From contig NC_091285.1 of NCBI RefSeq assembly GCF_032444005.1, positions 293,508,001 through 293,572,000 of the forward strand: 64,000 nucleotides of DNA, read 5' to 3'. The stretch comes from Ranitomeya imitator. Taxonomy: Eukaryota. Shown here in pieces: positions 1,489 to 64,000 of the stretch; the first letter of the stretch is position 1; every line of letters begins with the position of its first letter. The position numbers and the translations under genes were made by a program. Under the pieces are notes generated by a model that was given only the letters and a program-made list of their open reading frames with translations, did no database searches and had not been told where the DNA came from.

Positions 1489-2499
1489 ATGGACCCCGCT
1501 GGGGCCTCTGCTACGCAAAAAGAGCTACTCTTTTTGCGGGAGAATCAGTCCCGTATGATGTCCTTTATGAAGGCTATGGATTCTCGTTTGTCCACGCTCC
1601 TGTCCTCCGATCCTGGCAACGCCGCTCTACTCATTGGCTTACAGCAAGAGTTAGCTCAGCAGCGTGACACCCAGGCCCATATACTTAGTTATATGTCTTC
1701 TATTGACGATCGGCTGCTTTCCATCCAGACAGCCGCTTCTACGTCTGCTCCTGCTTCCCACCCTCCACCCCGCTTGGCTAAACCGCCTCGGTACAATGGG
1801 GATCCTAAGTCCTGCCGAGGATTTCTAAACCAATGCCGTCTTCACTTTGAGCTTCTGCCCCAGCATTACCCGACGGATCGGTCCAAAGTTGCGTTTTTGA
1901 TTTCCCATCTAGAGGGTGACGCCTTGGCATGGGTTAATCCACTCTGGGAGCGAGACGATCCCCTAGTCTCCCGGTTGTCTGAATTTTTGGAGACTTTCCG
2001 TCTTGTCTTTGACGAACCTGGACGACTGGCCTCTACAACTGAAGCCCTATTCTCTCTCCATCAGGGATCGTTATCCGTAGGCCAGTACGCTATTCAGTTC
2101 CGCACCCTCTCCTCTGACTTGGGCTGGAACAATGAGGCGTTGGTGGGTGCTTTCTGGCGGGGTCTCTCTGGGCGCATAAAGGATGAGTTAGCTGGTCGGG
2201 ACACCCCTACGGTTTTGGAGGAATTAATTTCCTTAGCGACCCGTATTGACCTTCGGTTCCAAGAACGCGCTCGCGAGCGGAGGTCTCTTCGTCCTTCTTC
2301 TGCCACCCGTAAGCCACTCAGTCCACAGCCTAGAACCTCCTCTCAGGCGTCCGCACCGGAACCTATGCAAGTGGACCGTCTTAAAATGTCCGAACAACGT
2401 CGTAAAGAGAGGCGCACTCAGGGGTTATGTTTTTACTGCGGAAGTGCTGCTCATTTATTGCGCTCTTGCCCTGAACGTCCGGAAAACTCCTCCGCCTAG
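1489..2499 (+). CDS. gag: Gag polyprotein (336 aa) with capsid-like domain and CCHC zinc knuckle
   Basis: [15 protein letters not shown] motif, EPMQVD motif, [14 protein letters not shown] knuckle; PEG10/RTL1-like Gag; ATG 13 nt after the LTR. Confidence 0.93.
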
Positions 2500-2526
2500 G
2501 TCAGGTAAGAGAGGCCTCCCTAGGTG
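2481..2526 (+). promoter_or_regulatory. Putative -1 ribosomal frameshift signal (gag-pol)
   Basis: G_GAA_AAC at 2481-2487 in the gag frame, 5-nt spacer, then stem CGCCTAGG(2493-2500)/CCTAGGTG(2519-2526); the -1 frame is open into the protease. Confidence 0.7.
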
Positions 2527-5500
2527 TGTGTGATTCCTCTCAACCCCTTACTTTGTCCGTTCTTTTGCATATTGCGGGCAAGGGCGTTTCTCTGGATGCG
2601 TATGTGGATTCGGGCGCTGCAGGGAATTTTATTAGGTTGGAAGAGGTTTTGAAATTCTCCGTTCCAGTCAGAACCTTAGAGGCTCCTGTGATTCTAGCAT
2701 CTGTGGATGGTAAACCTTTACAGGAGACCATTACTCAAGTGACACTTGAGGTGGAACTTCAGGTTGGGGCTCTGCACAAGGAGAGAATTGCATTTTATGT
2801 TTTAGCGGGTCTGTCTCATCCTATGCTCTTAGGTCTTCCTTGGTTACGGAGCCACGAGCCCATTTTAGATTGGCGCAATGGTAATATCTTGCGCTGGGGT
2901 GAGCTTTGTCGGGAACGTTGTCTGCTGCCGGTGCGTCCTGTGGGATATTCCTCTAATTCTTCTCCTTCTTCTTCCTTTCCCGCCTTACCCTCTGTCTACA
3001 GCGCTTTTTCTGATGTCTTCAACAAGAAGGAGGCTGAGGAGCTTCTGCCTCACCGTCTCTATGATTGTCCCATAGATCTCGTGCCTGGAACTAACCCGCC
3101 CAGGGGCAGAATCTATCCTCTCTCTCCTGCTGAGACTCAAGCTATGTCTGAGTACATTCAAGAAAATCTTGCTAAAGGTTTCATCCGCAAGTCTTCTTCT
3201 CCGGCCGGAGCAGGGTTTTTTTTCGTGAAGAAGAAAGACGGTTCCCTCCGTCCCTGCATTGATTATCGAGGCCTAAACAACATCACGGTGAAGAACAAAT
3301 ATCCTCTGCCACTCATTCCGGAACTCTTCGACCGTCTTCGGGGTGCGCAAATCTTTACCAAATTAGATCTACGTGGCGCATACAATCTGGTTCGTATTCG
3401 TGCAGGAGATGAGTGGAAGACCGCCTTCAATACGCGTGACGGTCACTACGAATACTTGGTTATGCCGTTTGGTCTCTGCAACGCCCCCGCGGTTTTCCAG
3501 GAATTTGTGAACGATGTATTTCGGGATCTTCTCTACTCCTCAGTCGTGGTTTACCTTGACGACATCCTCATCTTCTCTCCGGATCTCTCCACTCACAGGC
3601 GAGATGTCCGCTGAGTCCTGCAAAGGCTAAGAGAGAATCATCTGTTCGCTAAGATTGAAAAGTGCGTCTTTGAACAGTCCTCTCTTCCCTTCCTTGGGTA
3701 TATTGTCTCACGATCTGGCTTAGAGATGGATCCAGAGAAGGTTTCTGCTGTCCTGAATTGGCCTCGTCCTCTTGGAACAAAAGCAATCCAATGTTTTCTT
3801 GGCTTTGCCAACTACTATAGACAATTTATTCCTCATTTTTCTTCCATGACCAAGCCTATCTCTGCCCTAGTTCGCAAGGGAGTCAATTCCAGCCTTTGGA
3901 CCCCTGAGGCTGAAGAGTCTTTTTTGTCCCTTAAACAAAGTTTCGCTACGGCCCCTGTGCTTCATCGTCCTGATGCTAATAGACCGTTTGTCCTTGAGGT
4001 CGACGCATCTTCTATTGGAGCTGGAGCAGTACTTTTGCAAAGATCTTCGTCCGGACGTTTGGTGACCTGTGGTTTCTTTTCTAAAACTTTTTCCGCTCCT
4101 GAGCGTAACTACTCTATAGGGGATAAGGAGCTATTGGCTATCAAGCTAGCCTTGGAAGAATGGCATTATCTTCTTGAAGGGTCTCTTCATCCATTCATCA
4201 TTTACACTGACCACAAGAATCTGGCCTATATTCAGTCTGCCCAAAGACTAAATCCACGACAAGCCAGATGGTCTTTATTCTTCGGACGATTTGAGTTTGA
4301 ACTTCATTTCCGACCTGGAAATAAGAATGTCAAAGCAGATGCTCTTTCGAGATCCTTTCAACCTCAGGACATGGAGGATTCTCCGGCTCACATCATTGAT
4401 CCTGCGAGGATCGTCACTCTTGCTCCTCTAAGAGTGATTCCTACTCCTCCTGGCAAGACTCTTGTGGCTAATCAAGACAAGGAGAGAGTTTTACGTTGGG
4501 GTCACTCCTCCAAAATTGCAGGACATGTAGGAGTCAAGAAGACACTGTCTCTTATCTCTCGGCACTACTGGTGGCCATCTCTCCGTCAAGACGTCACCAA
4601 ATTCATCGCTTCTTGTCCTTCTTGTGCTAAAAATAAAGTCCCTAGGCAGCTTCCCTCCGGTCTCCTGCATCCTCTGCCTGTGCCTTCCGTTCCATGGAGT
4701 CATATCGCTATGGACTTCATCACTGATCTACCTTCTTCCTTGAATTGCTCTGTCATCTTGGTTGTTGTAGATCGGTTCTCTAAAATGGCTCACTTCATCG
4801 CTTTGCCTGGTCTGCCTTCCGCTCCTGAGTTGGCAAAGATCTTTTTACACCAAGTCTTCCGTCTTCATGGTTTTCCACATCATATTGTCTCAGACCGTGG
4901 AGTACAATTTACCTCACGTTTTTGGAGAGCTCTCTGCAGTCTATTAAAGGTTAACTTGGACTTCTCTTCCGCCTATCACCCTCAGTCCAACGGACAAGTG
5001 GAGCGAGTTAATCAAGTTCTGACTACATATCTGCGACACTTTACCAATGCACACCAAGATGACTGGGTCTCTCTTCTCCCTTGGGCTGAATTCTCTTACA
5101 ACAATCTTCCCAGCGAGTCTTCCTCCAAATCTCCCTTTTTCATAGTCTATGGTCAACATCCGAACATTCCTCTTCCTGTTTCTCTTTCCTCGGGGGTACC
5201 GGCAGCGGATTTCTTGTCCCGGGAATGCTCTACGATTTGGAATGAGACCAAAGTGGCTCTTGAGAAAGCTAGCCTTAATATGAAAAGGTTTGCTGACAAG
5301 AAGCGTTTGGATGCTCCGCCATATTCTCCGGGTGATAAAGTTTGGCTCTCCTCTCGCTATATCAAGCTTAAAATTCCCTCTTACAAACTGGGTCCTCGCT
5401 ACATTGGTCCTTTTCCTATCTTGAGTCGCATTAATGATGTCTCTTATAAGTTGAAGCTACCTGCCTCTTTGCGCATCCCCAATGCCTTCCATGTGTCTCT

Positions 5501-5921
5501 TCTTAAACCCGCAGTCTTTAATTGTTTTCACTCCGCTACCTCTTCCTCTCCTCAGCCCTGTACTTCTGATGGAATCTTTAATGTTAAAGATATTCTTGCC
5601 AAAAAAGTAGTTAGGGGTAAAACTTATTTTTTGATTGATTGGGAGGGATTTGGCCCTGAGGAGAGGTCCTGGGAGCCCTGAGAGAACATCAACGCTTCCC
5701 TTATCATGAAAAGATTCCTTTCTAGCCTTAAAAGGAGGGGGACTAAGGAGGGGGGTACTGTCACGCCCGCACATACTTACCCGGCTTCTCCCATCCCTCG
5801 GCGCGCTCACGATCTTGTCCCGCGCCGCTCTGCCTCCTCCTTTGCCGGCTCTCGGCGTCTGGTCTCTTCGCGCATGCGCGGTCGCGTCTCCCCCGTCGCT
5901 GAGCCTTCTGGGAGGTCGTGA
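2481..5921 (+). pseudogene. pol: Pol (PR-RT-RH-IN-chromodomain) in a single frame with two in-frame TGA stops
   Basis: VDSGA protease, YLDD RT, DAS RNaseH, HHCC and DDE integrase, YFLIDWEGFGPEERSWEP chromodomain; stops at 3612-3614 and 5679-5681; no frameshift seen. Confidence 0.93.
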
Positions 5922-13790: not shown

Positions 13791-14020
13791 NNNNNNNNNN
13801 NNNNNNNNNNNNNNNNNNNNNNNNNNNNNNNNNNNNNNNNNNNNNNNNNNNNNNNNNNNNNNNNNNNNNNNNNNNNNNNNNNNNNNNNNNNNNNNNNNNN
13901 NNNNNNNNNNNNNNNNNNNNNNNNNNNNNNNNNNNNNNNNNNNNNNNNNNNNNNNNNNNNNNNNNNNNNNNNNNNNNNNNNNNNNNNNNNNNNNNNNNNN
14001 NNNNNNNNNNNNNNNNNNNN
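13791..14020. other. Assembly gap (230 N)
   Basis: Run of N. Confidence 1.
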
Positions 14021-26739: not shown

Positions 26740-29700
26740 TTAACTTCTTTCTGACATCAGATGCAATAATCCGTGCCTGTGTCCTGGACCTATTTGACCA
26801 GAGACGGATTATTGCGTCTGAGCTATAGTCCATGCACATGGGGGGGAGGAGCGCGGGCGATCACCACCGACTGTCACAAACCACACCCGGCACTTTAACC
26901 CCCGAAATGCAGCAATCTAACTTGATCGCAGCATTCCGGAAACCAGCAGAGGGATGAAAGCCCATCTGCCTTTCGATCAGAGTCCCCGCAGCATGGTCCC
27001 GATCGTTGCCATGGTGACCCCATGTCGTCATAAATACATCCGGGTCACCAGGCCTAGCAAACTTGCCGATCATGCCCAATGCATGATCAGCAAGTTTGTC
27101 TGTCAGTGCAGAGCTGACAGCTTCTGCAGCATGGGGATGCTGCTTCTTCTCCATGCTGTAGAAGCGATCAACATGACAAAATGGTAGTCCCACATAAGGA
27201 CACAGTGGAAAAGTTAGAAAAAAGTAAAAAAAAAAAAAGTTTTTTAGATAACTTTACAAATATTTACAATTTTTTAAAAAATAATAATAAAAAAATCTAA
27301 AGATATTGTATCTCTAAATAAATATTTGAATTAAAAAAATGCCCACATATTTTGTATCAACACATCTGCAACAACCCGACCTATAAAACTTTTCCACTAG
27401 TTAACCCCTTTAGTGAACACCATAAAAAATCAATAAAAACAAAGCAAAAAACCTTGCTTTATCATACCGCCAAACAAAAAGTGGAATAAAATGCAATAAA
27501 AAAGACCAATATAAATAAACATGGCACCACTGAAAACAAGATTTTGTCCCACAAAAAACAAGCCAGCATACAGCTCCATCAGAGGAAAAATAAAGTCATA
27601 GCTCTCAAAATAAAGTGATGAAAAGATAATTATTTTTTCTATAAAATAGTTTTTATTTCATAAAAGCGCCAAAACATAAAAAAAAGATATAAATGAGCTA
27701 TCACTATAATAGTCCCGACAAGAAAAATAAAACTGCCTTATCACTTTCACTACACACAGAACGGCATACCCCATCCCCCCCCCCATCCCCCGCAAAAAAA
27801 AATAAATCCCTAATTGCTGGTGTTTATTTGTTTTGCCTCACAAAAATTAGAATAGAAAGAATAGAAAGCGATAAAAAAAAAGTCATGTGTCCGAAACTGG
27901 TACCAATAATAATTGTAACTTGTCCTGCAAATAATAAGACCTCACATGACTCTGTGGGCCAAAATATGGAAAAATGATAGCTCTCAAAATGTGGTGATGC
28001 AAAAACTATTTTTTGTAATAAAAAGTGTCTTTTAGTGTGTGACAGGAGCCAAACATAAAAACCCGACATAAATCTGGTATTGCTGCAATCGCACTGACCC
28101 AAAGAATAAAGTTGCCTAATTGTCTATACCGCATGAGAAACAGCGTAAAAGATAAATAAAACCAATTCTTCACATGCTGTTGATTTTTTCATTCTGCCTC
28201 CCAAAGATCGCAGTAAGGCTTGACGCACATTTATCCTGGGTTCTGCGCTGAGCGCTTATACCGGAGTTTTCGTGTGAATCTCTGAAACACGTGATTCAGA
28301 TGGAATCTCTGGCGCAAGATTTCCTATAATGAGGCAGATGGAGGCACTGTGGACGTCGTCTGACCTGTGATCCGGCGGTGTTCATCTTTTTAGGATTGCA
28401 TAAAAGTGCTGTTGGCAACAGTTTTGTGCACTTCTGAAATGGACACCGCTGAACAGAGGCCAGACGAAGTCAATATTAACTCTGCTGCCTCATTATAGTG
28501 AATAATGAGACAATGATAAATGGTCTGAGGAGTGCAGGAAAGAGACACAGATGAGAGATGGGGTTAAACCACAACGCGTTCGACATCAGGTGGATGTTTC
28601 ATCAGGTGGATGTTTATTCATCTGTGGAAACGCGTTGTGGTTTGACCCCATCTCTCGTCTGTGTCTCGTTCCTGCTCTCGTCAGACTGTTTATCATTGTG
28701 TCATTGCTCCCATCCTCCATTGGAGGTTCTCGGCTGGAGCTGTGGTGGAGACCTGACATCCTGCCCACCCCTGGGCTGCTTCCTAAGCACTCCTATATGA
28801 CCGCTCATCACTGACTCTCATTTCATTACAGTGAATGGCTCCCTCAGGGGTTTCATCTGAATCACGTCACTCAGATGGAAACCCCAAAGCAAGTGCTCAG
28901 CGTAGAGCACCCAATCATTGTGATCCCAAATGTTATGTAAAATGCTCTTAATAAAAGCTTCAACTCAATCCACAAAAAAAGCAATTTCCCACTCAGATCT
29001 GTCATCTGTTAGTGGAAATATAGGGGGCTTCCACATTAGTGGTAGCACAAAGGCTCTGTAAAAGTGAAATGGCTCCTCACCCGGCAAAAGAAATTCAGCA
29101 AATTGTCCGCTCCCAAATCCAAATGCCCCGCTCCCTTCTGAGCCCCACAGTGTACCTAAACCACATAATGCATCCACATTTGCTATTTCTGAAGTGATGA
29201 GAGCCCGTCTACCTTACGGGTGCATGCCTCCAGAAGTACGGGCTGAGCATAACATACTGGTGACTGGAACCTACTGGTTATTACAGCATACTGGTCACTG
29301 CAACAGAAGTTTGCAATTTTTCAGTTGGCAACATTCACTGCTGCTTGCTTCTGGAAAATACCATTGGAGTCAAAATCATCACTACACCTGTAAATAAATT
29401 TCCCAAGAGGTATAGTTTCCCAAATGGGGTCAATTAAGGGGAGATTCTGCTCTTCAAGCAACTAAGGGCTCTGTATATGGAGTCCGCAAACTGTTCTAGG
29501 AAAATCTAAGCTCCAGGAGGAAAATTCCTCCCGAGTCTCTTCATACGGCTAAGAAGTACTGTACAACCACATATGAGGTATTGCCATGTTCAGTAAGTTC
29601 AGTAATAGTGGGACAAATTTTTGTGTCATTTTTACCCACTTCTTGTGTGAAAATATGAAATTTTGGGCAAATACAAAATTTTGGTGGTAAAAATGTAGTT

Positions 29701-30966
29701 ATTTTGTTTTCACTGCCCAATGGTATAAAATTCTGTGACAATGGTGTCAATATGATCACTGCACCCCTATATGAATTCATTGAGAGGTGTAGTTTGTAAA
29801 ATGGGATCAAATAAGGAGGGTTCTGCTGTTCTGACTTCTCATGGGCTCTCACAGTGGATCATGGCACCTGCAAACCATAACAGTAAAATCTAGCACGCCT
29901 TGCCTTCTGAGCTTTGCACTGTGCCTGAACAATATTTCCCGATTACATGCAGAGTGTTTTGCGCACTCAGGAAAAAATGGACCTCAGTTTCTTGTAAAAA
30001 AAATTCCTATTAGCTCTTAGAAAAATTAAAAACTTGGGGCTAAAACAACATTTTAATGGTAAAAACTTAATTTATTCTTTCTTCACCGCTCATAAAACTC
30101 TGTGAGGCACTATGTGACAATATGATCACTGCGCCTTTAGATGAATTCATTGGGTAATGTAGTTTGTAAAATGAGGTCACACATAGGGGGTTTATGTCGT
30201 TCTGGCACCTCAGGGGTTTTGCCAATGTGACATGGCACCTTTAAACCATTCCAGCAAACTCAGAACTCCAATATGGCACCTCTTCCCTTCTAAGCATACT
30301 CAGGAGAAAGTGCCAAATAAATTGTATGGTGCTATTTCTCCTGTTACCCTTATGAAAATGCAATATTTTGTGATAAAAACATATTTATAGGGAAAATTAG
30401 ATTTTTATGGTTCAATATTATAAACTTCTGTGAAGCACCAGAGAGTCCAATGTGCTCACAACACATCTAGATCAGTTCCAGGAGGGGTCCAGTTTCCAAA
30501 ATGGTGTCACTTTTGGGGGATTTTCACTGTTTAGGCACATCAGAGGCACTCCAAACGCAACATTGCGTCTGCCAATTGTTCCAGCAAATTTTGCATTCAA
30601 AAAGTCAAATTGCGCTCCTTCCCTTCCAAGCTCTGCCGTGCACCCAAACAATGGTTTTCTCCCTCATATGGGGTATCTGTGTACTCAGGAGAAATTGCAC
30701 AAACAAATTTTGTCGTTAATTTTTTCCTGTTACCCTTTTCAAAATAAAAAAATTTTAATCTGAAGTTAATTTTGGGGTAAAAAAAAGTTAAACGTTCATT
30801 TTTTTTCCACATTCCAAATATTCCTGTAAAGCACCTGAAGGGTAAATAAACTTCTTGAATGTAGTTTTGAGCACCTTGAGGGTAAAGAATGGTGTCACTT
30901 TTGGGTATTTTAATTCATATAGACCCTTCAAAGTGACTTCAAATTTCAACCCTTATAACTTCCTAA
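26740..30966. mobile_element. Large degenerate non-autonomous element with ~390-bp internal repeats, same family as 45063-49811 in opposite orientation
   Basis: 30440-30950 is the reverse complement of the 45560-46100 repeat sequence; boundaries approximate. Confidence 0.7.
28504..28822. mobile_element. Fold-back insertion with a hammerhead motif and 14-bp TSD
   Basis: TCATTA(T/C)AGTGAAT at 28490-28503 and 28823-28836; inverted arms 28504-28580 and 28629-28705; HHR-like motif on the minus strand at 28569-28609. Confidence 0.75.
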
Positions 30967-31619: not shown

Positions 31620-31660
31620 CCCGACGCGCGTTTCGGAGCCGAGGCTCCTTCGTCAGGGGG
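31620..31660 (-). ncRNA. Minimal type I hammerhead ribozyme
   Basis: Minus strand CCC-CTGACGA-A-GGAGC CTCG GCTCC-GAAA-CGCGCG-TC-GGG: complete core and GUC cleavage triplet. Confidence 0.85.
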
Positions 31661-33390: not shown

Positions 33391-34848
33391 TCACAGAAAC
33401 GACGCAAAACTAATGGTCTCATTAAGTCCATGAGGATGGACGCTATTAAGCGTCCATATCCACCGAGTCTCAAGCTGTGCCAACCGTTGCGAGATATTAC
33501 CTCCCCTTATATTCGTTTCAATCATATCGATACCCTTGACACGCAGTACACTGCTGTCGCACTTATGATGTGTCTTGAAATGTCGGGGTATCGTTTTGAG
33601 TAGATGGTCCTCCGTTTCCAACGCAGCTGCCTCAATACCCCGAACATGCTCCCTCACCCTGATTTTTAATTGCCTTGTCGTGAGCCCTATATAAATCAAT
33701 GGGCACGGGCAGGACGCATAATATATGACATTCCTGGACGTGCATGTGATGCATTTCTTAATTTTGAAACTTTTTTGTCCAGTCGAGTCAATAAATGTGT
33801 CCTCCCTCACGATATTTTTACAGGCTATGCATTTACCACAGGTACGACAGCCACCACTCGGTTTATAGCATGGATCATTAAGAAATGTCTCTGGTGATTT
33901 ACCGATGTAGTGGCTGCGCACCAAATGGTCACGCATATTTTTCGCCCTACGAAATGTAATCATAGGCCGGTCAGGTATAATTTTGGCCAGTGTTGAATCA
34001 GTCCTCAGGATGGGCCAAGTATGTTCAAGGGCAGTGCGGATAGCTCCCGCGCGTGAATTGAAATTAGTCACGAATCTGGTCACATCAGACCCTTTGCCCC
34101 TATCCTGACCCCCATATAATAGTGTGTCCCTAGTGCTGTGTGTAGCACGGAGGTATGCTCGTTTTATGGAGCGGTTACTGTACCCGCGTTCCCTAAAACG
34201 AGACTTAAGAACCTCCGCCTGTACCTCAAATTCGGCATTGGTAGAACAGATACGACGTATCCGTAAAAATTGTCCTACTGGGACCGAACGGACCATATGT
34301 GCTGGATGGGAGGAGGAAGCATGGAGGAGCATGTTGGTGGCAGTAGGTTTTCTATATACGGTAGTTTGAATGGTATTGGCCCTATCCCTAGTCAGCCTCA
34401 CATCAAGAAAATCAATAGTCGAGCCATTAGATGTAGCTGTCAATTTAATGTTCCTGTCATTGACATTAAGGGCGGTTACAAAGTCAGAGAACGTACCCTG
34501 ATCGCCCTGCCAGATAACGAGGATGTCGTCTATGTAGCGCGTCCAAAGAAGGACGCGCTCCATAGACGACAGACTCTCTGACCGTAGGAGGTCCCTCTCC
34601 CACAGCCCCAGGAACAGATTAGCATAGGAGGGCGCAAAGGCCGCTCCCATGGCTGTTCCCTGGAGCTGCAGGAAGAAGGACCCCCTAAACGTAAAGAAAT
34701 TGTGCATCAAAGTGAACCTCAACATTTCCAATAGGAAATCTCGAAAATCATGGGAACAATTGGATGTGGAAAGAAAGAACTCTGTGGCCGCCAAGCCATC
34801 CTCATGGCGAATGCTAGTATACAAAGATTCCACATCCATTGTTTCCAT
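33391..34848 (-). CDS. Penelope-like reverse transcriptase plus GIY-YIG endonuclease (N-terminally truncated, 485 open codons)
   Basis: MDVESLYT, GTAMGAAFAPSYANLF and RYIDD motifs; Cys-rich linker CRTCGKCIAC; VIYYASCPCPLIYIGLT..REH. Confidence 0.92.
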   Translation of the reverse strand: METMDVESLYTSIRHEDGLAATEFFLSTSNCSHDFRDFLLEMLRFTLMHNFFTFRGSFFLQLQGTAMGAAFAPSYANLFLGLWERDLLRSESLSSMERVLLWTRYIDDILVIWQGDQGTFSDFVTALNVNDRNIKLTATSNGSTIDFLDVRLTRDRANTIQTTVYRKPTATNMLLHASSSHPAHMVRSVPVGQFLRIRRICSTNAEFEVQAEVLKSRFRERGYSNRSIKRAYLRATHSTRDTLLYGGQDRGKGSDVTRFVTNFNSRAGAIRTALEHTWPILRTDSTLAKIIPDRPMITFRRAKNMRDHLVRSHYIGKSPETFLNDPCYKPSGGCRTCGKCIACKNIVREDTFIDSTGQKSFKIKKCITCTSRNVIYYASCPCPLIYIGLTTRQLKIRVREHVRGIEAAALETEDHLLKTIPRHFKTHHKCDSSVLRVKGIDMIETNIRGGNISQRLAQLETRWIWTLNSVHPHGLNETISFASFL

Positions 34849-34954
34849 GATAGTAAAAAAAAAATAGAAATAGAAATAGAAAATACATATGAAAGATATC
34901 AGCAATAGTGGTATGAAATTTCATTCCTTTTGTTCAAACCTAAATAAAGTGATA

Positions 34955-35660
34955 AAAAGGAATGAAATTTCATACCACTATTGCTGATAGCTTTCATATG
35001 TATTTTCTATATGTATTTTTAGTGCATCTTTCCATTCTGTTGTGCGATAAAATGCATGCAGTCACGATCTGTAGGACCTTTTCATTTATCATGTGACTCT
35101 GCCAGATTGGCTGTATGCCTGTTTTTTTTTTTTTTTTTTTGAAGGTTAGAACAAAAGGAATGACATTTCATATCACTACGTTTGATATTTTATATATGTA
35201 TTCTTTATATGTATTTTTATTGTACCTTTCCATTCTGTCTTGTGATAAAATGCATGTAGTTGCGATCTGTAGGACCTTTCTATTTATCTATTTCTATCAT
35301 GTGATTCTGATAGAGTGTGTGATAGGTCCATTTTTTCTATATAAGCAAGACTGAATGTGGGTTTTATATGGGCATCAATAAGATCCTGTGTGATCGAAAC
35401 ACGTTGCCTATATTCATGTAACCACCTGCGCCCTGTTTACTCTGTAAGGATGTCCGTTTTAATGAAGTTGGACTAATAAAGAATTTTGCCATTTTATTGG
35501 AGCTGGAGTTTCCACGTTTTCGTATACTGCAATTGCTTGGCGTCTTGGTCTGGACGAATCTCCGTGCTCAATTATCTATGGTCTGGTTGGTGAGCTGGCT
35601 GCGGCTTATAGCCGATTTTTTTCTATTGCAGACGCATACAGTGACTGCAGACTTGTACCC
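34955..35660 (+). repeat. Penelope-type tail / pseudo-LTR-like segment in inverted orientation with a decayed hammerhead
   Basis: Begins with the right arm of a 56-bp inverted repeat; GATC ctgtgt GATC-GAAA-CACG-TT-GCC at 35382-35408; AATAAA near 35476; right boundary approximate. Confidence 0.5.
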
Positions 35661-43046: not shown

Positions 43047-44675
43047 AAGCCAATATGCTAAATGACTTTTTTTCATCAGTATTTACAAAAGAAAATCCCA
43101 TGGCAGACAATATGATCAGTGATAACAAAAATTCCACATTAAGTGTCACCTGCTTAACCCAGCAGGAAGTATGGCGGCGTGTAAAAATCACTAAAATTGA
43201 CAAATCTCCGGGCCCGGACGGGATACACCCTCGAGTACTGCAGGAATTAAGTACAGTCATTGATAGACCATTATTTTTAATCTTTAAAGACTCCATAATA
43301 ACAGGGTCTGTGCCAACAGGACGGGCGTATAGCAAATGTGGTGCCAATATTCAAAAAGGGGACAAAAACCGAACTCGGTAATTATAGGCCAGTAAGCTTA
43401 ACCTCTACTGTGGGTAAAATCCTGGAGGGCATTCTAAGGGATGCTATACTGGAGTATCTAAAGAGGAATAACCTCATGACCCAGTATCAGCACGGGTTTA
43501 CTAGGGACCGTTCATGTCAGACTAATTTGATCAGCTTCTATGAAGAGGTAAGTTCCGGACTGGACCAAGGGAACCCAGTAGATGTATTGTATATGGACTT
43601 TTCAAAAGCTTTTGATACGGTGCCACAGAAAAGGTTGATACATAAAATGAGAATAATGGGAATTGGGGAAAATATGTGTAAGTGGGTTGAAAGCTGGCTC
43701 AGGGATAGGAAACAAAGGGTGGTTATTAATGGAACACACTTGGACTGGGTCGCAGTTAGCAGTGGGGTACCACAGGGGTCAGTATTGGGCCCTCTTCTTT
43801 TTAACATATTTATTAATGACGTTGTAGGGGGCATTCAGAGTAGAATTTTAATATTTGCAGATGACACTAAACTCTGCAGGGTAATCAATACAGGGGAGGA
43901 CAAGTTTATATTACAGGATGATTTATGTAAAATAGAAGCTTGGGCTGATAAATGGCAAATGAGCTTTAATGGGGATAAATGTAAGGTCATGCACTTGGGT
44001 AGAAGTAATAAGATGTATAACTATGTGCTTAATTCTAAAACTCTGGACAAAACCGTCAATGAAAAAGACCTGGGTGTATGGGTGGATGACAAACTCATAT
44101 TCAGTGGCCAGTGTCAGGCGGCTGCTACTAAGGCAAATAAAATAATGGGATGCATTAAAAGAGGCATAGATGCTCATGAGGAGAATATAATTTTACCTCT
44201 ATACAAGTCAATTGTTCGACCACACTTAGAATACTGTGCACAGTTCTGGTCTCCGGTGTATAAGAAAGACATAGCTGAACTGGAGTGGGTTCAGAGAAGA
44301 GCAACCAAGGTAATTAGAGGACTGGGGGGTCTGCAATACCAAGATAGGTTATTACACTTGGGGCTATTTAGTTTGGAAAAACAAAGACTAAGGGGTGATC
44401 TTATTGTAATGTATAAATATATGAGGGGACAGTACAAAGACCTTTCTGATGATCTTTTTAATCATAGACCTGAGACAGGGACAAGGGGGCATCCTCTACG
44501 TCTGGAGGAAAGAAGGTTTAAGCATAATAACAGACGCGGATTCTGTACTGTAAGAGCAGTGAGACTATGGAACTCTCTGCCATATGATGTTGTAATGAGT
44601 GATTGGTTACTTAAATTTAAGAGGGGACTGGATACCTTTCTGGAAAAGTATAATGCTATAGGGTATATATACTAG
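43047..44675 (+). pseudogene. CR1 ORF2 reverse transcriptase region with one frameshift near 43317
   Basis: NDFFSSVFTKE and KSPGPDGIHPRVL in one frame, PIFKKG onward in another. Confidence 0.9.
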
Positions 44676-48049: not shown

Positions 48050-48346
48050 NNNNNNNNNNNNNNNNNNNNNNNNNNNNNNNNNNNNNNNNNNNNNNNNNNN
48101 NNNNNNNNNNNNNNNNNNNNNNNNNNNNNNNNNNNNNNNNNNNNNNNNNNNNNNNNNNNNNNNNNNNNNNNNNNNNNNNNNNNNNNNNNNNNNNNNNNNN
48201 NNNNNNNNNNNNNNNNNNNNNNNNNNNNNNNNNNNNNNNNNNNNNNNNNNNNNNNNNNNNNNNNNNNNNNNNNNNNNNNNNNNNNNNNNNNNNNNNNNNN
48301 NNNNNNNNNNNNNNNNNNNNNNNNNNNNNNNNNNNNNNNNNNNNNA
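48050..48346. other. Assembly gap (297 N)
   Basis: Run of N. Confidence 1.
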
Positions 48347-59033: not shown

Positions 59034-60388
59034 TTCCCCCTTAGTTAAGAACAGTACTCCGGGACTGTGGGACGATAACATTTTGAAATAACAATTAATA
59101 TGTACAGAGTCTTAAAAATGAAAAGTTACAAAAACCACTCAAGGAAACAAAAATAGAGTTCTGTAAAAAGTCACTTCAAATAGCGTCCATTAATACAGTT
59201 CTATCCTTGAAGGTACTAGGAAAGGCACTGCACTTTGTGTCCAAGAATTTAGCTCCATTTTTCCAACGGAGTTACCAATATAAAGTCTAAAGAAAGTTCA
59301 AAAAGCAGTCTTTCCGGAGCTTTGATTTAGTGTCTCCGGGCTGATAAAACGTTCAAGAATATGCAATAAGTTCATGCAGACAAGTCTCTGTAGGTACTGG
59401 GCTTAAACGTTGCAGAATGATAACAATGACTACAGTTTTATAGTTGGTAATCCGCATACCTGGCCGGTAATTGACCCTGGGTACTACGCTGTGATCTACG
59501 TAATAGCGGTGTCTCTTCATGTGGTGTACTACTGTCTACTGCGGATGTAGTATCTGCCCGCTCTGCTAAAGATAATTCCATGACTATGGAGTTGGCAAGT
59601 CCACAGTGAATGGGATTACTCTGATCAGGAATCTGTTCTTCCTGGCCTGGAACCTCCCGTAGTACGGGGTCAGCCTCTTCCTGTCTTGGGACTTCTGGTA
59701 TTGGGTTCGGTGTTGGGTAAAAGGCCACCATGGGAACCACTACTGCACCATGGTATGTTAGTAGGGTTTTGGGAAAGTCTCCTATACAGGTGTGATACAT
59801 TTCCTCTTCTTTTTCCTTTACTGGTTGGACCTGCAAGGGTTGAATAACTTCTGGTTCTGGCTGGACAACTTCTGGCTCTTTCAATGCTTCCGGACATAAT
59901 TTAAGATTGTCTCTTGACACTAGTACAGATGTTAAGCCTCCGTTTTTGCTAATGAGACACATTTTAGGATTATCCATTCTTGTTGGTAAAACTGTGTAGG
60001 GTACGGCTTCCCACTGATTGTCTAGTTTATTGGTTCGACGATTTCTCTTGAGCACTTGGTCACCCGGTCTTAATGGGGTCGCTAGAGCATTCTGGTTGAA
60101 AGTTCGCTCTTGTCTTTCTCTAGTTTGCTGAAGGCTTCTTTCCACACTCTCTTGCACTTGGCGATACTGCTTTTGCCGTATGATATCCCAATTGGAGTCT
60201 TGAACTTCTGCGTCTGGTTTCAGAATTCCCATTTCTAGATCGATTGGTAATTGGCCGGGTCTTGCACGCATAAGGTAAGCTGGGGTGCAGTTGGTGGAGC
60301 TCACCGGGACATGATTATACAGATCCACCAAGTCAGGCAATTTCTCTGGCCATTGATTCCTTTCTGTCTCAGGTAAAGTCTTTAGTAG

Positions 60389-62253
60389 TATCTCTAAACA
60401 GCAAAAGCACAAAAAGAGGATTCAGAGATCCTCCAAAAATTAGAAAAAACAGCAGCAAAACACGGCAGAGGTTCTTACCTGCCTAGGCCTCCAAACAAAT
60501 GCACTAACAGGATGCAGTGGACCCATGTGGTAAAATAGAAACACAGGTGCAGCATAACCGATGACACAGCCACTTACCAGCTACCAAACTAATGGAGGGG
60601 GTGGCTGCTTGGCACAAGCTGCACATAAAAACTTGCATGTGGCGCTGTTCACACAATGGAGATGCACAGCATCCAGGCAGGACTAGTAGTGACACCCTTC
60701 TATTAGATCAGGCGGGCCTGCCCAGCGCTATCCAAATGCACCCCATGTGCACAGACACCACAGTTTACAAGCAGAAAATGGGCCCAACTGCACCCCGAAA
60801 AAAAGTGCAAAAAACACATAAAAAAAAAATATTATGTGAGGTATTGGTTTATATTCTGGCCAAAATACGCAAGCTCATAACCCACATCAAGGGTCCTCCC
60901 GCTTATGAGTCCTATCTCTAAACAGCAAAAGCACAAAAAGAGGATTCAGAGATCCTCCAAAAATTAGAAAAAACAGCAGCAAAACACGGCAGAGGTTCTT
61001 ACCTGCCTAGGCCTCCAAACAAATGCACTAACAGGATGCAGTGGACCCATGTGGTAAAATAGAAACACAGGTGCAGCATAACCGATGACGCAGCCACTCA
61101 CCAGCTACCAAACTAATGGAGGGGGTGGCTGCTTGGCACATAGCTGCACATAAAAACTTGCATGTGGCGCTGTTCATACAATGGAGATGCACAGCATCCA
61201 GGCAGGCCTAGTAGTGACACCCTTCTATTAGATCAGGCGGGCCTGCCCAGCGCTATCCAAATGCACCCCATGTGCACAGACACCACAGTTTACAAGCAGA
61301 AAATGGGCCCAACTGCACCCCGAAAAAAAGTGCAAAAAACACATAAAAAAAAATATTATGTGAGGTATTGGTTTATATTCTGGCCAAAATACGCAAGCTC
61401 ATAACCCACGTCAAGGGTCCTCCCGCTTATGAGTCCTATCTCTAAACAGCAAAAGCACAAAAAGAGGATTCAGAGATCCTCCAAAAATTAGAAAAAACAG
61501 CAGCAAAACACGGCAGAGGTTCTTACCTGCCTAGGCCTCCAAACAAATGCACTAACAGGATGCAGTGGACCCATGTGGTAAAATAGAAACACAGGTGCAG
61601 CATAACCGATGACGCAGCCACTCACCAGCTACCAAACTAATGGAGGGGGTGGCTGCTTGGCACATAGCTGCACATAAAAACTTGCATATGGCGCTGTTCA
61701 CACAATGGAGATGCACAGCATCCAGGCAGGCCTAGTAGTGACACCCTTCTATTAGATCAGGCGGGCCTGCCCAGCGCTATCCAAATGCACCCCATGTGCA
61801 CAGACACCACAGTTTACAAGCAGAAAATGGGCCCAACTGCACCCCGAAAAAAAGTGCAAAAAACACATAAAAAAAAAAATATTATGTGAGGTATTGGTTT
61901 ATATTCTGGCCAAAATACGCAAGCTCATAACCCACGTCAAGGGTCCTCCCGCTTATGAGTCCTATCTCTAAACAGCAAAAGCACAAAAAGAGGATTCAGA
62001 GATCCTCCAAAAATTAGAAAAAACAGCAGCAAAACACGGCAGAGGTTCTTACCTGCCTAGGCCTCCAAACAAATGCACTAACAGGATGCAGTGGACCCAT
62101 GTGGTAAAATAGAAACACAGGTGCAGCATAACCGATGACGCAGCCACTCACCAGCTACCAAACTAATGGAGGGGGTGGCTGCTTGGCACATAGCTGCACA
62201 TAAAAACTTGCATGTGGCGCTGTTCACACAATGGAGATGCACAGCATCCAGGC
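60389..62253 (-). mobile_element. Non-coding tandem-repeat insertion: 3.55 copies of a 524-526-bp unit with a 13-bp TSD
   Basis: Unit starts at 60389, 60913, 61437 and 61963; AAGTCTTTAGTAG at 60376-60388 and 62254-62266. Confidence 0.95.
61360..61434 (-). ncRNA. Candidate atypical HDV-like self-cleaving ribozyme (also at ~60836-60910 and ~61886-61960)
   Basis: Manual fold: P1 CTCATAA/TTATGAG, P3 CCC/GGG, L3 TTGACGT, P4 GTATTTT/AGAATAT, J4/2 CCAA; P2 imperfect. Confidence 0.4.
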
Positions 62254-64000
62254 AAGTCTTTAGTAGGTCTATTACAATATGGTTCATCTTCTCGCATAAG
62301 CCGTTTGTTTGTGGATGATAGGCCGTCGTCCGGATCTTTTTGCAACCATACATATTACAGAATTCTCTGAAGATCTCTGATTCAAAGGCTGTACCTTGGT
62401 CGGTGAGAACCTGTTCTGGATATCCATGGGGTCTACAAAAGTACGTTTGGAACGCTTTGGCTGCTGTTTTTGCTGTCAGATCTTTTACGGGTCCTACTAC
62501 CAAGAAGCGTGAATAATGGTCCACGATGGTCAAGGCATAGACATAGCCGGACCGGCTTGGTGTCAACTTCACGTGGTCTATGGCTACAAGTTCAAGTGGT
62601 TGTTTGGTGATAATGGGCTGCAGTGGTGCTCTTTGGTTCTTTTGATCGTTTCTTCTGAGGTTGCACGGGCCACAGTTTCTGCACCACTGTTCGATTGATT
62701 TTCTCATCCCGACCCAATAAAATCTTTCTCTTAGAAGTACTTCTAACTTTTTCCAACCGAAGTGACCAGCACCATTATGGTAAGCTTCAAGGACCATCTT
62801 CACATCTTGTTTAGGCACGATAATCTGCCAAACCAATTCATGTGTTTTCGGATTGGTGTACCTTCTACAGAGCTTCCCTTGATACAGGAACATTTTGCCT
62901 CTCTCTTTCCAGAGTTGATGTGTCTCTTCTGGGGCATCCTTATTGGGATATGCACTTTGCTCAGTCAGCAGTTCCTTCACCAACTTCACAGCCGGATTGC
63001 TGTCTTTGGTGTCAGCCCATCTATGGTGTGCTAACGGATTAAAATTCACCTCTTGTTGTTTCTGATAGGTACTTGACTGATGATGTTTTGCCTTGGGATG
63101 ATGGAAGGCTGGTAGTTCAATTTCTTCAAGCTCCCCCGTTTCTTCTTCTACATCTCTCAAGTGTGGCATCCGGGATAGGGCATCGGCATTTCCATTCTTG
63201 CGACCTGCTCGATACTTGATTATGAAGTTGTAATTAGATAACCGGGCTATCCATCGCTGTTCTAACGCACCTAATTTGGCTGTGTCCAGATGGGTCAACG
63301 GATTGTTGTCAGTATAGACAATAAATTCTGCAGCGGCCAGATAGTGTTTGAAACGTTCAGTCACAGCCCAAACTACTGCCAGTAGTTCCAATTTGAAGGA
63401 GCTGCAATTTTCTGAATTTCTTTCAGTTGGCCGGAGCTTTCTACTTGCAAAGGCGATGACTTTCTCCCGACCTTCTTGCTTTTGTGACAGCACCGCTCCT
63501 AGTCCCACATTACTGGCATCGGTGTAGAGGATGAAAGGTTGATGGTAATCTGGGTATGCCAGAACCTCTTCTCAGGTTAGTGCCTTCTTTAGTTGTTCAA
63601 AGGAGTCTTCCCTTTCATCGTTCCACTGAAAAGGAGGGTTTCGGTTTGAAGGTTTCTTCGTCTGCCCTACCAAGGCGTCTTGCAAGGGTGCTGCCAACTT
63701 GGTAAATCCTTTTATAAATCTGCGATAGTAACCCACCAATCCCAGGAATTGCCTCACTTCTTTTGCGTTGGTAGGTCTTGGCCAATCCCTTATGGCGCTT
63801 ATTTTCTCGGGATCCGGTGCTACTCCCTCCGAACTCACGATGTGTCCCAGGTACTGTACCTTTGGCTTGAGAAGGTGACATTTGGAAGGCTTGATTTTCA
63901 TGCCATACCTGGATAAGGCTTCGAACACTTCTGCCAGGTCTTTTAAGTGTTGTTTGTAAGTCTTTGAGTAGACGATCACATCATCTAGGTACAGGAGGAC

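What the first reader, a model, noticed from the sequence alone, without database searches (positions are those of the whole stretch)
60376..62266. Retrozyme-like array: 3.55 tandem copies of a ~525-bp non-coding unit inserted in one event into a Gypsy integrase
Seen: a perfect 13-bp TSD; removing the insert restores the integrase frame exactly; copies are about 99% identical; no ORF, LTR, TIR or poly(A). On the minus strand the array starts mid-unit (5' truncation) and ends at a unit boundary. Established: non-LTR retrozymes are tandem copies of 150-400-nt hammerhead RNAs with TSDs, attributed to reverse transcription of circular or multimeric RNA. No hammerhead is present here. Inference: a new retrozyme-like family copied by rolling-circle target-primed reverse transcription.
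Basis: partly seen in the sequence, partly recalled or inferred. Interest (0 to 1): 0.85.

Follow-up and report, generated by a model that had tools for sequence, protein, structure and literature searches.

The report
Ribozyme-free tandem retro-insertion in frog Gypsy
A young 1.9-kb insertion made of 3.55 head-to-tail copies of an abundant non-coding 525-bp frog repeat splits a Gypsy integrase gene; it was most likely pasted in by reverse transcription of a multi-unit RNA in the style of Penelope-like elements, has no ribozyme, and nothing shows an RNA circle.

Summary
At 60389-62253 there are 3.55 tandem copies of a 524-526-bp unit, bounded by a perfect 13-bp duplication, AAGTCTTTAGTAG. They sit inside a minus-strand Gypsy integrase. 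Contigs from three public runs carry the same Gypsy sequence without the insert and skip exactly 1878 bases.

The unit belongs to an abundant, diverged family found in runs labelled as at least five organisms (A-E), so it is not a single-locus sequence. It has no conserved ORF, LTR, TIR or terminal poly(A). It has no hammerhead or any other Rfam ribozyme, although the same search mode does find a minimal hammerhead in this window's Penelope copy.

My reading is a single target-primed reverse-transcription event that copied a multimeric RNA, most likely borrowing Penelope-like element (PLE) machinery. That makes it a ribozyme-less relative of animal non-LTR retrozymes. By definition it is not a retrozyme.

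The rolling-circle or circular-RNA idea has no support. Copy 1 carries 5 of the 7 differences between copies (p about 0.02), including two CpG decays. That fits a heterogeneous multimeric template better than one circle.

The PLE link is circumstantial, because no partner element was found. The RNA strand is unresolved.

Unchecked notes from this scan report HHR retrozymes with 13-14-bp TSDs and another ribozyme-free tandem family (437 bp) elsewhere in this genome.

The parts
60376..60388 (.). Left copy of the 13-bp target-site duplication AAGTCTTTAGTAG. On the minus strand it encodes LLKT of the integrase.
60389..60912 (.). Copy 1 of the unit (524 bp). It is the most divergent copy, with 5 private differences including two CpG-to-CpA changes.
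60913..61436 (.). Copy 2 of the unit (524 bp), with 1 private substitution.
61437..61962 (.). Copy 3 of the unit (526 bp), with 1 private substitution and a longer A-run.
61963..62253 (.). Partial copy 4 (first 291 nt of the unit as read on the + strand). In full copies, the unit's only TAGTAG lies 5 nt past this break point (for example 61209-61214).
62254..62266 (.). Right copy of the 13-bp target-site duplication.
62267..63508 (-). Host Gypsy pol upstream of the insert: RNase H, integrase zinc-binding domain and rve core, which ends 15 residues before the break.
59441..60375 (-). Host Gypsy pol downstream of the insert: integrase C-terminal region, in the same frame as the upstream piece.
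63575..63979 (-). Host Gypsy reverse-transcriptase C-terminal part, in a separate ORF. The pol is also interrupted between 63509 and 63571.

Best explanation
This is one young retro-insertion of a multimer of an abundant, non-coding, roughly 525-nt repeat family.

Proposed mechanism: an endonuclease made a 13-bp staggered cut in a Gypsy integrase. A reverse transcriptase primed on one nicked strand and copied 3.55 consecutive units of a multi-unit RNA, most likely a read-through transcript of a genomic tandem array of the same family. Copying started at a fixed position in the unit that has no homology to the target. At the far end, the cDNA was joined to the other target overhang at a patch of microhomology.

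The most likely enzyme is that of a Penelope-like element (PLE: RT plus GIY-YIG endonuclease) acting in trans. That makes the unit a ribozyme-less, non-autonomous PLE hitch-hiker. It works like an animal non-LTR retrozyme but lacks the hammerhead that defines one.

Shown: the insert, the TSD, the empty-site form, family abundance, absence of known ribozymes, unequal divergence between copies, and microhomology at one junction.

Inferred: the RNA intermediate, the PLE enzyme, the multimeric linear template, and the RNA strand. I lean about 60:40 to the minus strand, which would put the start at ...GTTTAGAGATA and the 5' truncation at the TAGTAG microhomology.
For: 1. A 13-bp perfect TSD and an exact empty-site form in three runs. 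Thirteen bp does not fit the TSDs I know for integrases (4-6 bp) or DNA transposases (up to about 11 bp); it does fit TPRT elements with variable TSDs. This comparison is from my own knowledge. PMC8557442 states that PLE TSD length is variable.
2. A head-to-tail multimer with a partial first unit is the standard PLE insertion layout. [quoted passage not shown]
3. [quoted passage not shown] Here the left junction has no microhomology: 54% of unit positions score as well.
4. At the right junction, the unit's own continuation, CAGGCCTAGTAG, resembles the TSD. Only about 2% of unit positions score as well, and the unit's single TAGTAG sits there. This is typical of microhomology-guided 5' joining.
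5. The family is abundant and diverged. In run X1, 2691 contigs laid at 90% likeness or better: 1044 at 99% or more, 899 at 95-99% and 748 at 90-95%. Unit words occur in runs labelled as at least five organisms (A-E) and 10 studies, including runs of only 6-29 million letters. A 488-nt contig from organism B crosses a unit junction in the same register.
6. Copy 1 carries 5 of 7 differences (binomial p about 0.02), including two CpG decays. This is expected if the template was a transcript of a heterogeneous genomic array.
7. A PLE with RT and GIY-YIG motifs, a minimal type I hammerhead and an inverted/tandem 5' structure lies in the same window.
8. Unchecked scan notes report hammerhead retrozymes with 13-14-bp TSDs in this genome.
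Against: - No sequence similarity links the unit to the only PLE copy available, and no autonomous partner was identified.
- The optional PLE hallmarks, an inverted arm and a 30-40-bp tail, are absent.
- The nick sites are only moderately AT-rich and do not fall on an ATT motif.
- I could not retrieve other genomic copies, so a shared terminus across the family is unproven. The loose ends near the left boundary (positions 60386, 60406, 61971) partly resemble each other and may be subfamily variants rather than insertion ends.
- Transcription is only suggested, by runs whose RNA status is a guess.
Confidence: 0.5

Rival explanations
1. The unit is processed to a circular RNA of about 525 nt by an unrecognised ribozyme or a host nuclease/ligase, and a reverse transcriptase ran round the circle 3.55 times during target-primed reverse transcription.
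For: - The multimer has near-identical copies 2-4.
- The unit RNA folds much better than shuffles on both strands, z -4.9 and -3.4.
- Rolling-circle copying is the model usually given for hammerhead retrozymes (PMC7229834; preprint 10.64898/2026.07.22.740005).
- A 10-bp hairpin starts right at the unit boundary on the minus strand. In organism B contigs a variant changes A7-U to G.U, which keeps the pair (my reading).
Against: - No hammerhead, HDV-type, twister, pistol, hatchet or hairpin match at E up to 10 on either strand, even on a 788-nt query.
- No CUGANGA core even with one mismatch allowed.
- The proposed HDV-like fold lacks a canonical P1.1 and J4/2, and its P1 hairpin is not in the minimum-free-energy fold.
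- Copy 1 differs from copies 2-4 more than equal decay of identical copies allows (p about 0.02).
- Contigs in the probable RNA runs are short, diverged and shallow. They do not look like one dominant species.
- A circle is not needed to obtain tandem inserts (PMC11167929).
Confidence: 0.12
2. A conventional LINE (L2, CR1, RTE or L1 type) mobilised the unit in trans, either as a SINE-like or satellite transcript. The multimer comes from a multimeric transcript or from end-to-end template jumps between monomer RNAs.
For: - TSD length fits LINE TPRT, and there is microhomology at one junction.
- One strand is A-rich (35% A, 19% T).
- A 6-bp stem-loop lies about 25-45 nt from the minus-sense end, as in stringent LINE tails (sequence).
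- A LINE-type RT ORF is present in the window at 43338-44675.
- A high-depth contig in X16 shares only the first roughly 68 nt of the unit and then continues into other sequence. That could be a partner's tail.
Against: - No terminal poly(A) or 3' microsatellite.
- No tRNA, 7SL or 5S head.
- No similarity to any LINE in the window.
- As far as I know, head-to-tail multimers are not the usual product of LINE-driven SINE insertion.
Confidence: 0.17
3. The array reached its present size after insertion. A unit of about 1.55 copies, or a monomer, was inserted and was later amplified in place by unequal crossing-over or replication slippage. This rival concerns copy number only and is compatible with any insertion enzyme.
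For: - Copies 2-4 are almost identical while copy 1 stands apart, as expected if an inner unit was duplicated recently.
- Unequal crossover is a known source of retrozyme arrays (preprint 10.64898/2026.07.22.740005).
Against: - The B half existed only once in a 1.55-unit insert. Its two differences between copy 1 and copies 2-3 would then need extra steps.
- Multimeric register is a family property, seen in another organism's contig.
- The scan's notes describe young multimeric insertions of related kinds in this genome (unchecked).
Confidence: 0.12
4. DNA-level capture. A fragment of satellite or extrachromosomal circular DNA of this family was ligated into a staggered double-strand break, with no RNA intermediate.
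For: - The family is abundant and tandem.
- One junction shows microhomology.
- No RNA-specific mark such as a poly(A) tail is present.
Against: - A clean 13-bp duplication with no deletion or filler is not what end-joining capture usually leaves (my knowledge).
- The other junction has no microhomology.
- Scan notes report TSDs of 13-16 bp at other tandem insertions in this genome, which points to an enzyme with a fixed stagger (unchecked).
Confidence: 0.05

Closest known systems
Animal non-LTR retrozymes (Cervera & de la Pena 2020, PMC7229834; Li, Clavereau & Pollet 2026 preprint)
   Same: - Short non-coding unit in head-to-tail copies. The reported consensus range of 51-972 bp covers 525 bp.
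- Discrete insertions with TSDs longer than 4 bp.
- Low GC (47% here).
- Abundant in amphibians, and found together with PLEs.
   Different: - The defining type I hammerhead is absent from every unit on both strands.
- No circular RNA has been shown.
- No detectable similarity to a PLE pseudo-LTR.
Non-autonomous Penelope-like elements such as Chlamys-dependent MRC1, and hammerhead-free PLE clades Naiad/Chlamys (Craig et al. 2021, PMC8557442)
   Same: - No ribozyme.
- Pseudo-LTR or multicopy head-to-tail insertions.
- 5' truncation.
- Mobilised in trans by TPRT.
   Different: - Those elements are in green algae and invertebrates and share their 3' ends with an identified autonomous partner. No partner is identified here.
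- The canonical vertebrate PLE clades (Poseidon, Neptune) carry hammerheads.
Poseidon PLE of Anolis, in vitro (Frangieh et al. 2024, PMC11167929)
   Same: - A multi-copy RNA template.
[quoted passage not shown]
- A hammerhead that is dispensable for insertion.
Together these predict the kind of insert seen here.
   Different: - That work describes an autonomous 3-kb element.
- It shows AT-rich ATT cleavage preference and a 'tail' signature, neither of which is evident at this site.
Newt satellite 2 and similar transcribed amphibian satellites
   Same: A tandem, transcribed, non-coding amphibian repeat of a few hundred bp.
   Different: - Satellite 2 carries a hammerhead.
- It was described as satellite blocks rather than TSD-bounded insertions.
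TRIM / tandem LTR-element arrays
   Same: An A-B-A-B-A-B-A layout that begins and ends with the same 291-bp module.
   Different: - The TSD is 13 bp, not 4-6 bp.
- The ends are TA...CA or TG...TA, not TG...CA.
- No primer-binding site or polypurine tract abuts the module. I checked this by eye on the sequence.

Membership tests
Non-LTR retrozyme | Type I hammerhead ribozyme in each tandem unit | tested here: not met
   Rfam at E up to 10 on 3 kb and on 788 nt, both strands, gave no ribozyme. A descriptor scan allowing one core mismatch gave 0 hits. The same Rfam mode finds a minimal hammerhead at 31620-31659, E 0.2.
Non-LTR retrozyme | Head-to-tail copies of a short non-coding unit, bounded by a TSD longer than 4 bp | tested here: met
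   3.55 units of 524-526 bp and a 13-bp TSD. No conserved ORF.
Non-LTR retrozyme | Unit-length circular RNA in vivo | not testable with these tools
   Only assembled contigs of runs whose RNA status is a guess were available. Contigs cannot show circles.
Non-autonomous Penelope-like element | Partial-tandem or multicopy head-to-tail insertion with 5' truncation and a TSD of variable, often long, length | tested here: met
   A partial unit followed by three full units, on either parse, with a 13-bp TSD. Criteria taken from PMC8557442.
Non-autonomous Penelope-like element | Sequence similarity to an autonomous PLE, usually at the 3' end or pseudo-LTR | tested here: inconclusive
   No similarity to the rest of the window, including its one 5'-truncated PLE. 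Other PLE families of this genome could not be fetched.
Non-autonomous Penelope-like element | RT start junction without homology to the cleaved target | tested here: met
   The left junction scores at the median of all unit positions. This holds only if the minus strand is the RNA sense. Criterion taken from PMC11167929.
SINE / LINE-dependent retroposon | Pol III-type head (tRNA, 7SL, 5S) and a poly(A) or LINE-derived 3' tail at the insert end | tested here: not met
   No tRNA, no Rfam match, no terminal A-run or microsatellite, no shared tail with LINEs in the window.
LTR element / TRIM | TG...CA terminal repeats, a 4-6-bp TSD, and PBS and PPT | tested here: not met
   The TSD is 13 bp, proven by empty-site contigs. 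The ends and internal borders lack these motifs (sequence).
   No hit to any HDV-type Rfam family at E up to 10. By hand, a P1-like hairpin, a 3-bp GGG/CCC stem and a P4-like hairpin can be drawn, but no canonical P1.1 and only a 4-bp P2. The hairpin is not in the MFE fold. No covariation data were available.

The most novel reading that the evidence does not exclude
The unit boundary is a genuine RNA processing site made by an undescribed self-cleaving motif, or by a host-enzyme-dependent cut-and-ligate signal. In that case the family would be a new class of ribozyme-bearing, circle-forming retroelement in vertebrates, parallel to hammerhead retrozymes.
Probability: 0.08. Interest if true: 0.85.

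Novelty: new variant of a known kind. Interest (0 to 1): 0.4.

Why it matters
If the PLE link holds, this is a clean natural case in a vertebrate showing that retrozyme-style tandem retrotransposition does not need the hammerhead. That agrees with in-vitro work on an Anolis PLE, where hammerhead mutants insert normally, and with hammerhead-free PLE clades in invertebrates and algae.

It also points to a blind spot. Current retrozyme surveys find families by their ribozyme, so ribozyme-less hitch-hikers of this kind go uncounted in large amphibian genomes. There they may be annotated as satellites or unknown repeats.

The insert is young and both junctions are intact. It is therefore a useful specimen for working out how PLE-type integration starts (no homology) and ends (microhomology).

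Tried and rejected
- TRF found nothing because the period exceeds its 500-bp limit; the repeat finder recovered the array.
- Fetching other genomic copies failed by every route:
  - The 109-aa ORF of the unit has no homologue in the protein collection.
  - The window's intact Tc1 transposase is not on record.
  - The best Gypsy pol relatives are only 49% identical over most of the query (74% over 21%), so this genome is not in that collection.
  - A metagenome scan with a 19-mer returned seven chance matches of 19-23 nt only.
  - The scan's own index gave nothing by sequence.
- Read laying could be used only once, and most loose ends were not shown. The distribution of insertion ends across the family therefore remains unknown.
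- Readings rejected:
  - LTR/TRIM, because of the TSD length and missing motifs.
  - Helitron and DNA transposons, because of the 13-bp TSD and absence of TIRs.
  - tRNA-, 7SL- or 5S-derived SINE.
  - A coding gene.
- The inverted matches between the unit and the Gypsy flank (19-23 nt, 78-89% complementary, not collinear) are at chance level (E 0.33).
- A TSD for the window's Penelope copy could not be found.
- The tandem-like repeats with 330-377-bp spacing at 29367-30522 carry no hammerhead.
- RNA polarity could not be settled. The minus-sense reading fits 'no homology at the start, microhomology at the 5' joint'. The plus-sense reading fits the A-rich strand, the absence of TTTT runs (not significant: expected 0.6) and a GAUGC-ACA-GCAUC stem-loop just before the right end.
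Full report
**What is there**

Between 60389 and 62253 the + strand carries four in-register copies of one unit. Start-to-start spacing is 524, 524 and 526 bp, and the last copy stops after 291 nt, giving 3.55 units. TRF reported nothing only because its longest period is 500.

The array is bounded by AAGTCTTTAGTAG at 60376-60388 and again at 62254-62266, a 13 of 13 match. The unit occurs nowhere else in the 64-kb window.

The copies differ at seven substitution or indel columns, plus the length of one A-run.

**The host gene and the empty site**

The flanks belong to a minus-strand Ty3/Gypsy pol.
- 63575-63979 matches reverse transcriptase.
- 62267-63508 matches RNase H, the integrase zinc-binding domain and the rve core, which ends 15 residues before the break.
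- 59441-60388 continues the integrase C-terminal region.

The insert plus one TSD copy is 1878 bases, which is 3 x 626, and the two ORFs share one genomic frame.

Against homologue P0003, the upstream piece ends ...IDLLKT on residues 386-391. The downstream piece starts LLKTLPE on residues 388 onward. The 13-bp duplication therefore repeats the LLKT codons, and the homologue is continuous across the break.

Independently, contigs of 3180, 1836 and 836 nt from three public runs join 60375 to 62254. They skip exactly 1878 bases, with 13 letters common to both sides. These contigs are other copies of a very abundant Gypsy family. They show what the target looked like, not that this locus is polymorphic.

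**The unit is a family, not a local oddity**

Words of the unit occur in runs labelled as at least five organisms (A-E) and about ten studies. Some of these runs hold only 6, 21 and 29 million letters of contigs, which normally happens only for high-copy repeats.

In the best DNA run, 2691 contigs laid on the stretch at 90% likeness or better: 1044 at 99% or more, 899 at 95-99% and 748 at 90-95%. Internal-deletion and replacement variants were present as well.

A 488-nt contig from a second organism crosses a unit junction in the same register. The head-to-tail arrangement is therefore a property of the family.

Several runs guessed to be RNA hold 20-40% of the unit's words. Their contigs are short, diverged and shallow, and the RNA label is only a guess. 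Transcription is therefore suggested, not shown.

It does not settle the second (a shared 3' end).

**No ribozyme**

Rfam searched at E up to 10 on 3 kb, and again on 788 nt with laxer filters, returned only chance-level miRNA, lncRNA and riboswitch rows on either strand. The same mode finds a minimal type I hammerhead (E 0.2) in the tail of this window's Penelope copy, so the method can see such motifs.

A descriptor scan for CUGANGA with one mismatch allowed, a helix II of 3 bp or more, and then GAA, found nothing. No tRNA-like gene is present.

A 10-bp hairpin, a GGG/CCC stem and a small hairpin can be drawn. There is no canonical P1.1, P2 has only 4 bp, no HDV-type Rfam family matches, and the hairpin is not part of the predicted minimum-energy fold.

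The unit RNA does fold better than shuffled controls on both strands, z -4.9 for minus and -3.4 for plus. This is compatible with a structured RNA but is not diagnostic.

**What the junctions say**

At the left junction, the sequence that precedes the boundary inside the array bears no resemblance to the target; 54% of unit positions score as well.

At the right junction, the sequence that would have continued the unit, CAGGCCTAGTAG, resembles the TSD AAGTCTTTAGTAG. The unit's only TAGTAG lies 5 nt past the break, and about 2% of positions score as well. One end is therefore a clean start and the other a microhomology-guided joint.

The array reads A-B-A-B-A-B-A, so it parses identically on both strands as a partial unit followed by three full ones. 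A single copy cannot fix the polarity.
- If the RNA is minus-sense, reverse transcription began at ...GTTTAGAGATA without homology and ended by microhomology-guided 5' joining.
- If the RNA is plus-sense, the target overhang annealed to an internal UAGUAG region and synthesis ran to a 5' end at UAUCUC.

I lean about 60:40 to the first, because it matches both LINE-type 5' junctions and the PLE rule of non-homologous initiation.

**What the copies say**

Five of the seven differences are private to copy 1, the copy next to the clean junction. Copies 2 and 3 have one each and copy 4 has none. If four identical copies had decayed independently, finding at least five of seven in copy 1 has probability about 0.02. 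Two of the copy-1 changes are CpG-to-CpA, a DNA-level mutation signature rather than a polymerase error.

There are two simple explanations:
- the template already contained different units, for example a read-through transcript of a heterogeneous genomic array or successive RNAs; or
- copies 2-4 were duplicated or homogenised after insertion.

Either way, this is weak evidence against one circle copied 3.55 times.

**Most likely mechanism**

A 13-bp stagger does not fit the TSDs I know for integrases or DNA transposases (my knowledge). There are no TIRs, LTR motifs or poly(A). Target-primed reverse transcription is the best fit.

Among TPRT elements, the Penelope-like elements are the ones known for several matching traits:
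- partial-tandem and multicopy head-to-tail inserts, 5' truncation and variable TSD length;
- whole clades without hammerheads;
- non-autonomous hitch-hikers that make multicopy head-to-tail insertions (PMC8557442).

[quoted passage not shown] Animal hammerhead retrozymes are now argued to be non-autonomous PLE derivatives, with units of 51-972 bp (preprint 10.64898/2026.07.22.740005).

A PLE with RT and GIY-YIG motifs, a hammerhead and an inverted/tandem 5' structure lies in this same window.

Unchecked notes of this scan report the following in this genome:
- many hammerhead retrozymes with 13-14-bp TSDs;
- one ribozyme-free 437-bp tandem family;
- a roughly 500-bp fold-back family with a 16-bp TSD.

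I therefore read the array as a ribozyme-less, non-autonomous PLE-type element, with confidence about 0.5. The insertion-by-TPRT part alone is near 0.85.

**What is missing**

- No similarity to the window's PLE.
- No identified partner.
- No inverted arm or tail.
- No proof of a shared family terminus.

The loose ends in probable RNA contigs cluster near the left boundary (60386, 60406, 61971). Two of them resemble each other, so they may be subfamily sequence rather than independent flanks.

A high-depth contig in X16 shares only the first roughly 68 nt of the unit and continues into other sequence. This may be a related element or the partner, and it deserves a look in the assembly.

**Comparison and novelty**

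The element behaves like an animal non-LTR retrozyme but fails that family's defining test, the hammerhead. It should not be filed as one.

It matches the layout criteria of non-autonomous PLEs, but the partner-similarity criterion is untested.

I found no paper describing ribozyme-free retrozyme-like tandem elements in amphibians. Current surveys detect families through the ribozyme. I rate it a new variant of a known kind, of moderate interest.

The reading that would be truly new is an unknown self-processing motif and a circular RNA. It stays open at about 8%.

Noticed in passing
window 31620-31659 (-), with ORF 33391-34905 (-) and repeats at 34863-35288: A 5'-truncated Penelope-like element. 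Its 504-aa ORF has RT (YIDD) and GIY-YIG-like motifs. A minimal type I hammerhead (Rfam E 0.2, below gathering) sits in a CpG-rich tail about 1.7 kb downstream. Inverted (72-96 nt) and direct (136 nt) repeats lie at its 5' end, the typical PLE fold-back/partial-tandem layout. No TSD could be identified.
   Followed up: partly
The exact protein is not on record in the public gene-position collection.
   Followed up: partly
window 29367-30522: Four copies of a 79-nt segment spaced 330-377 bp apart (63-80% identity). This is an old, decayed tandem repeat just downstream of the Penelope tail. No hammerhead was found by Rfam at E up to 10.
   Followed up: partly
window 3726-5681 (+) and 1489-3614 (+): A second, different Ty3/Gypsy element whose long pol ORF carries RNase H, integrase, an SH3-like domain and a chromodomain.
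   Followed up: no
window 43338-44675 (+): A 445-aa ORF with a strong RVT_1 match (E 1e-33), probably a LINE reverse transcriptase. It has no similarity to the 525-bp unit.
   Followed up: no
run X16 contig touching window 60386-60454: A high-depth contig in a probable RNA run shares only the first roughly 68 nt of the unit (diverged) and continues for more than 240 nt into unrelated sequence. A second contig has a similar continuation. This may be a related element or the autonomous partner.
   Followed up: no
window 63509-63571 (-): The host Gypsy pol is also interrupted between its RT ORF and its RNase H/integrase ORF, so this copy was already, or is additionally, defective apart from the array insertion.
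   Followed up: no
window 13791-14020 and 48050-48345: Two runs of N (230 and 296 bases). I left them untouched.
   Followed up: no
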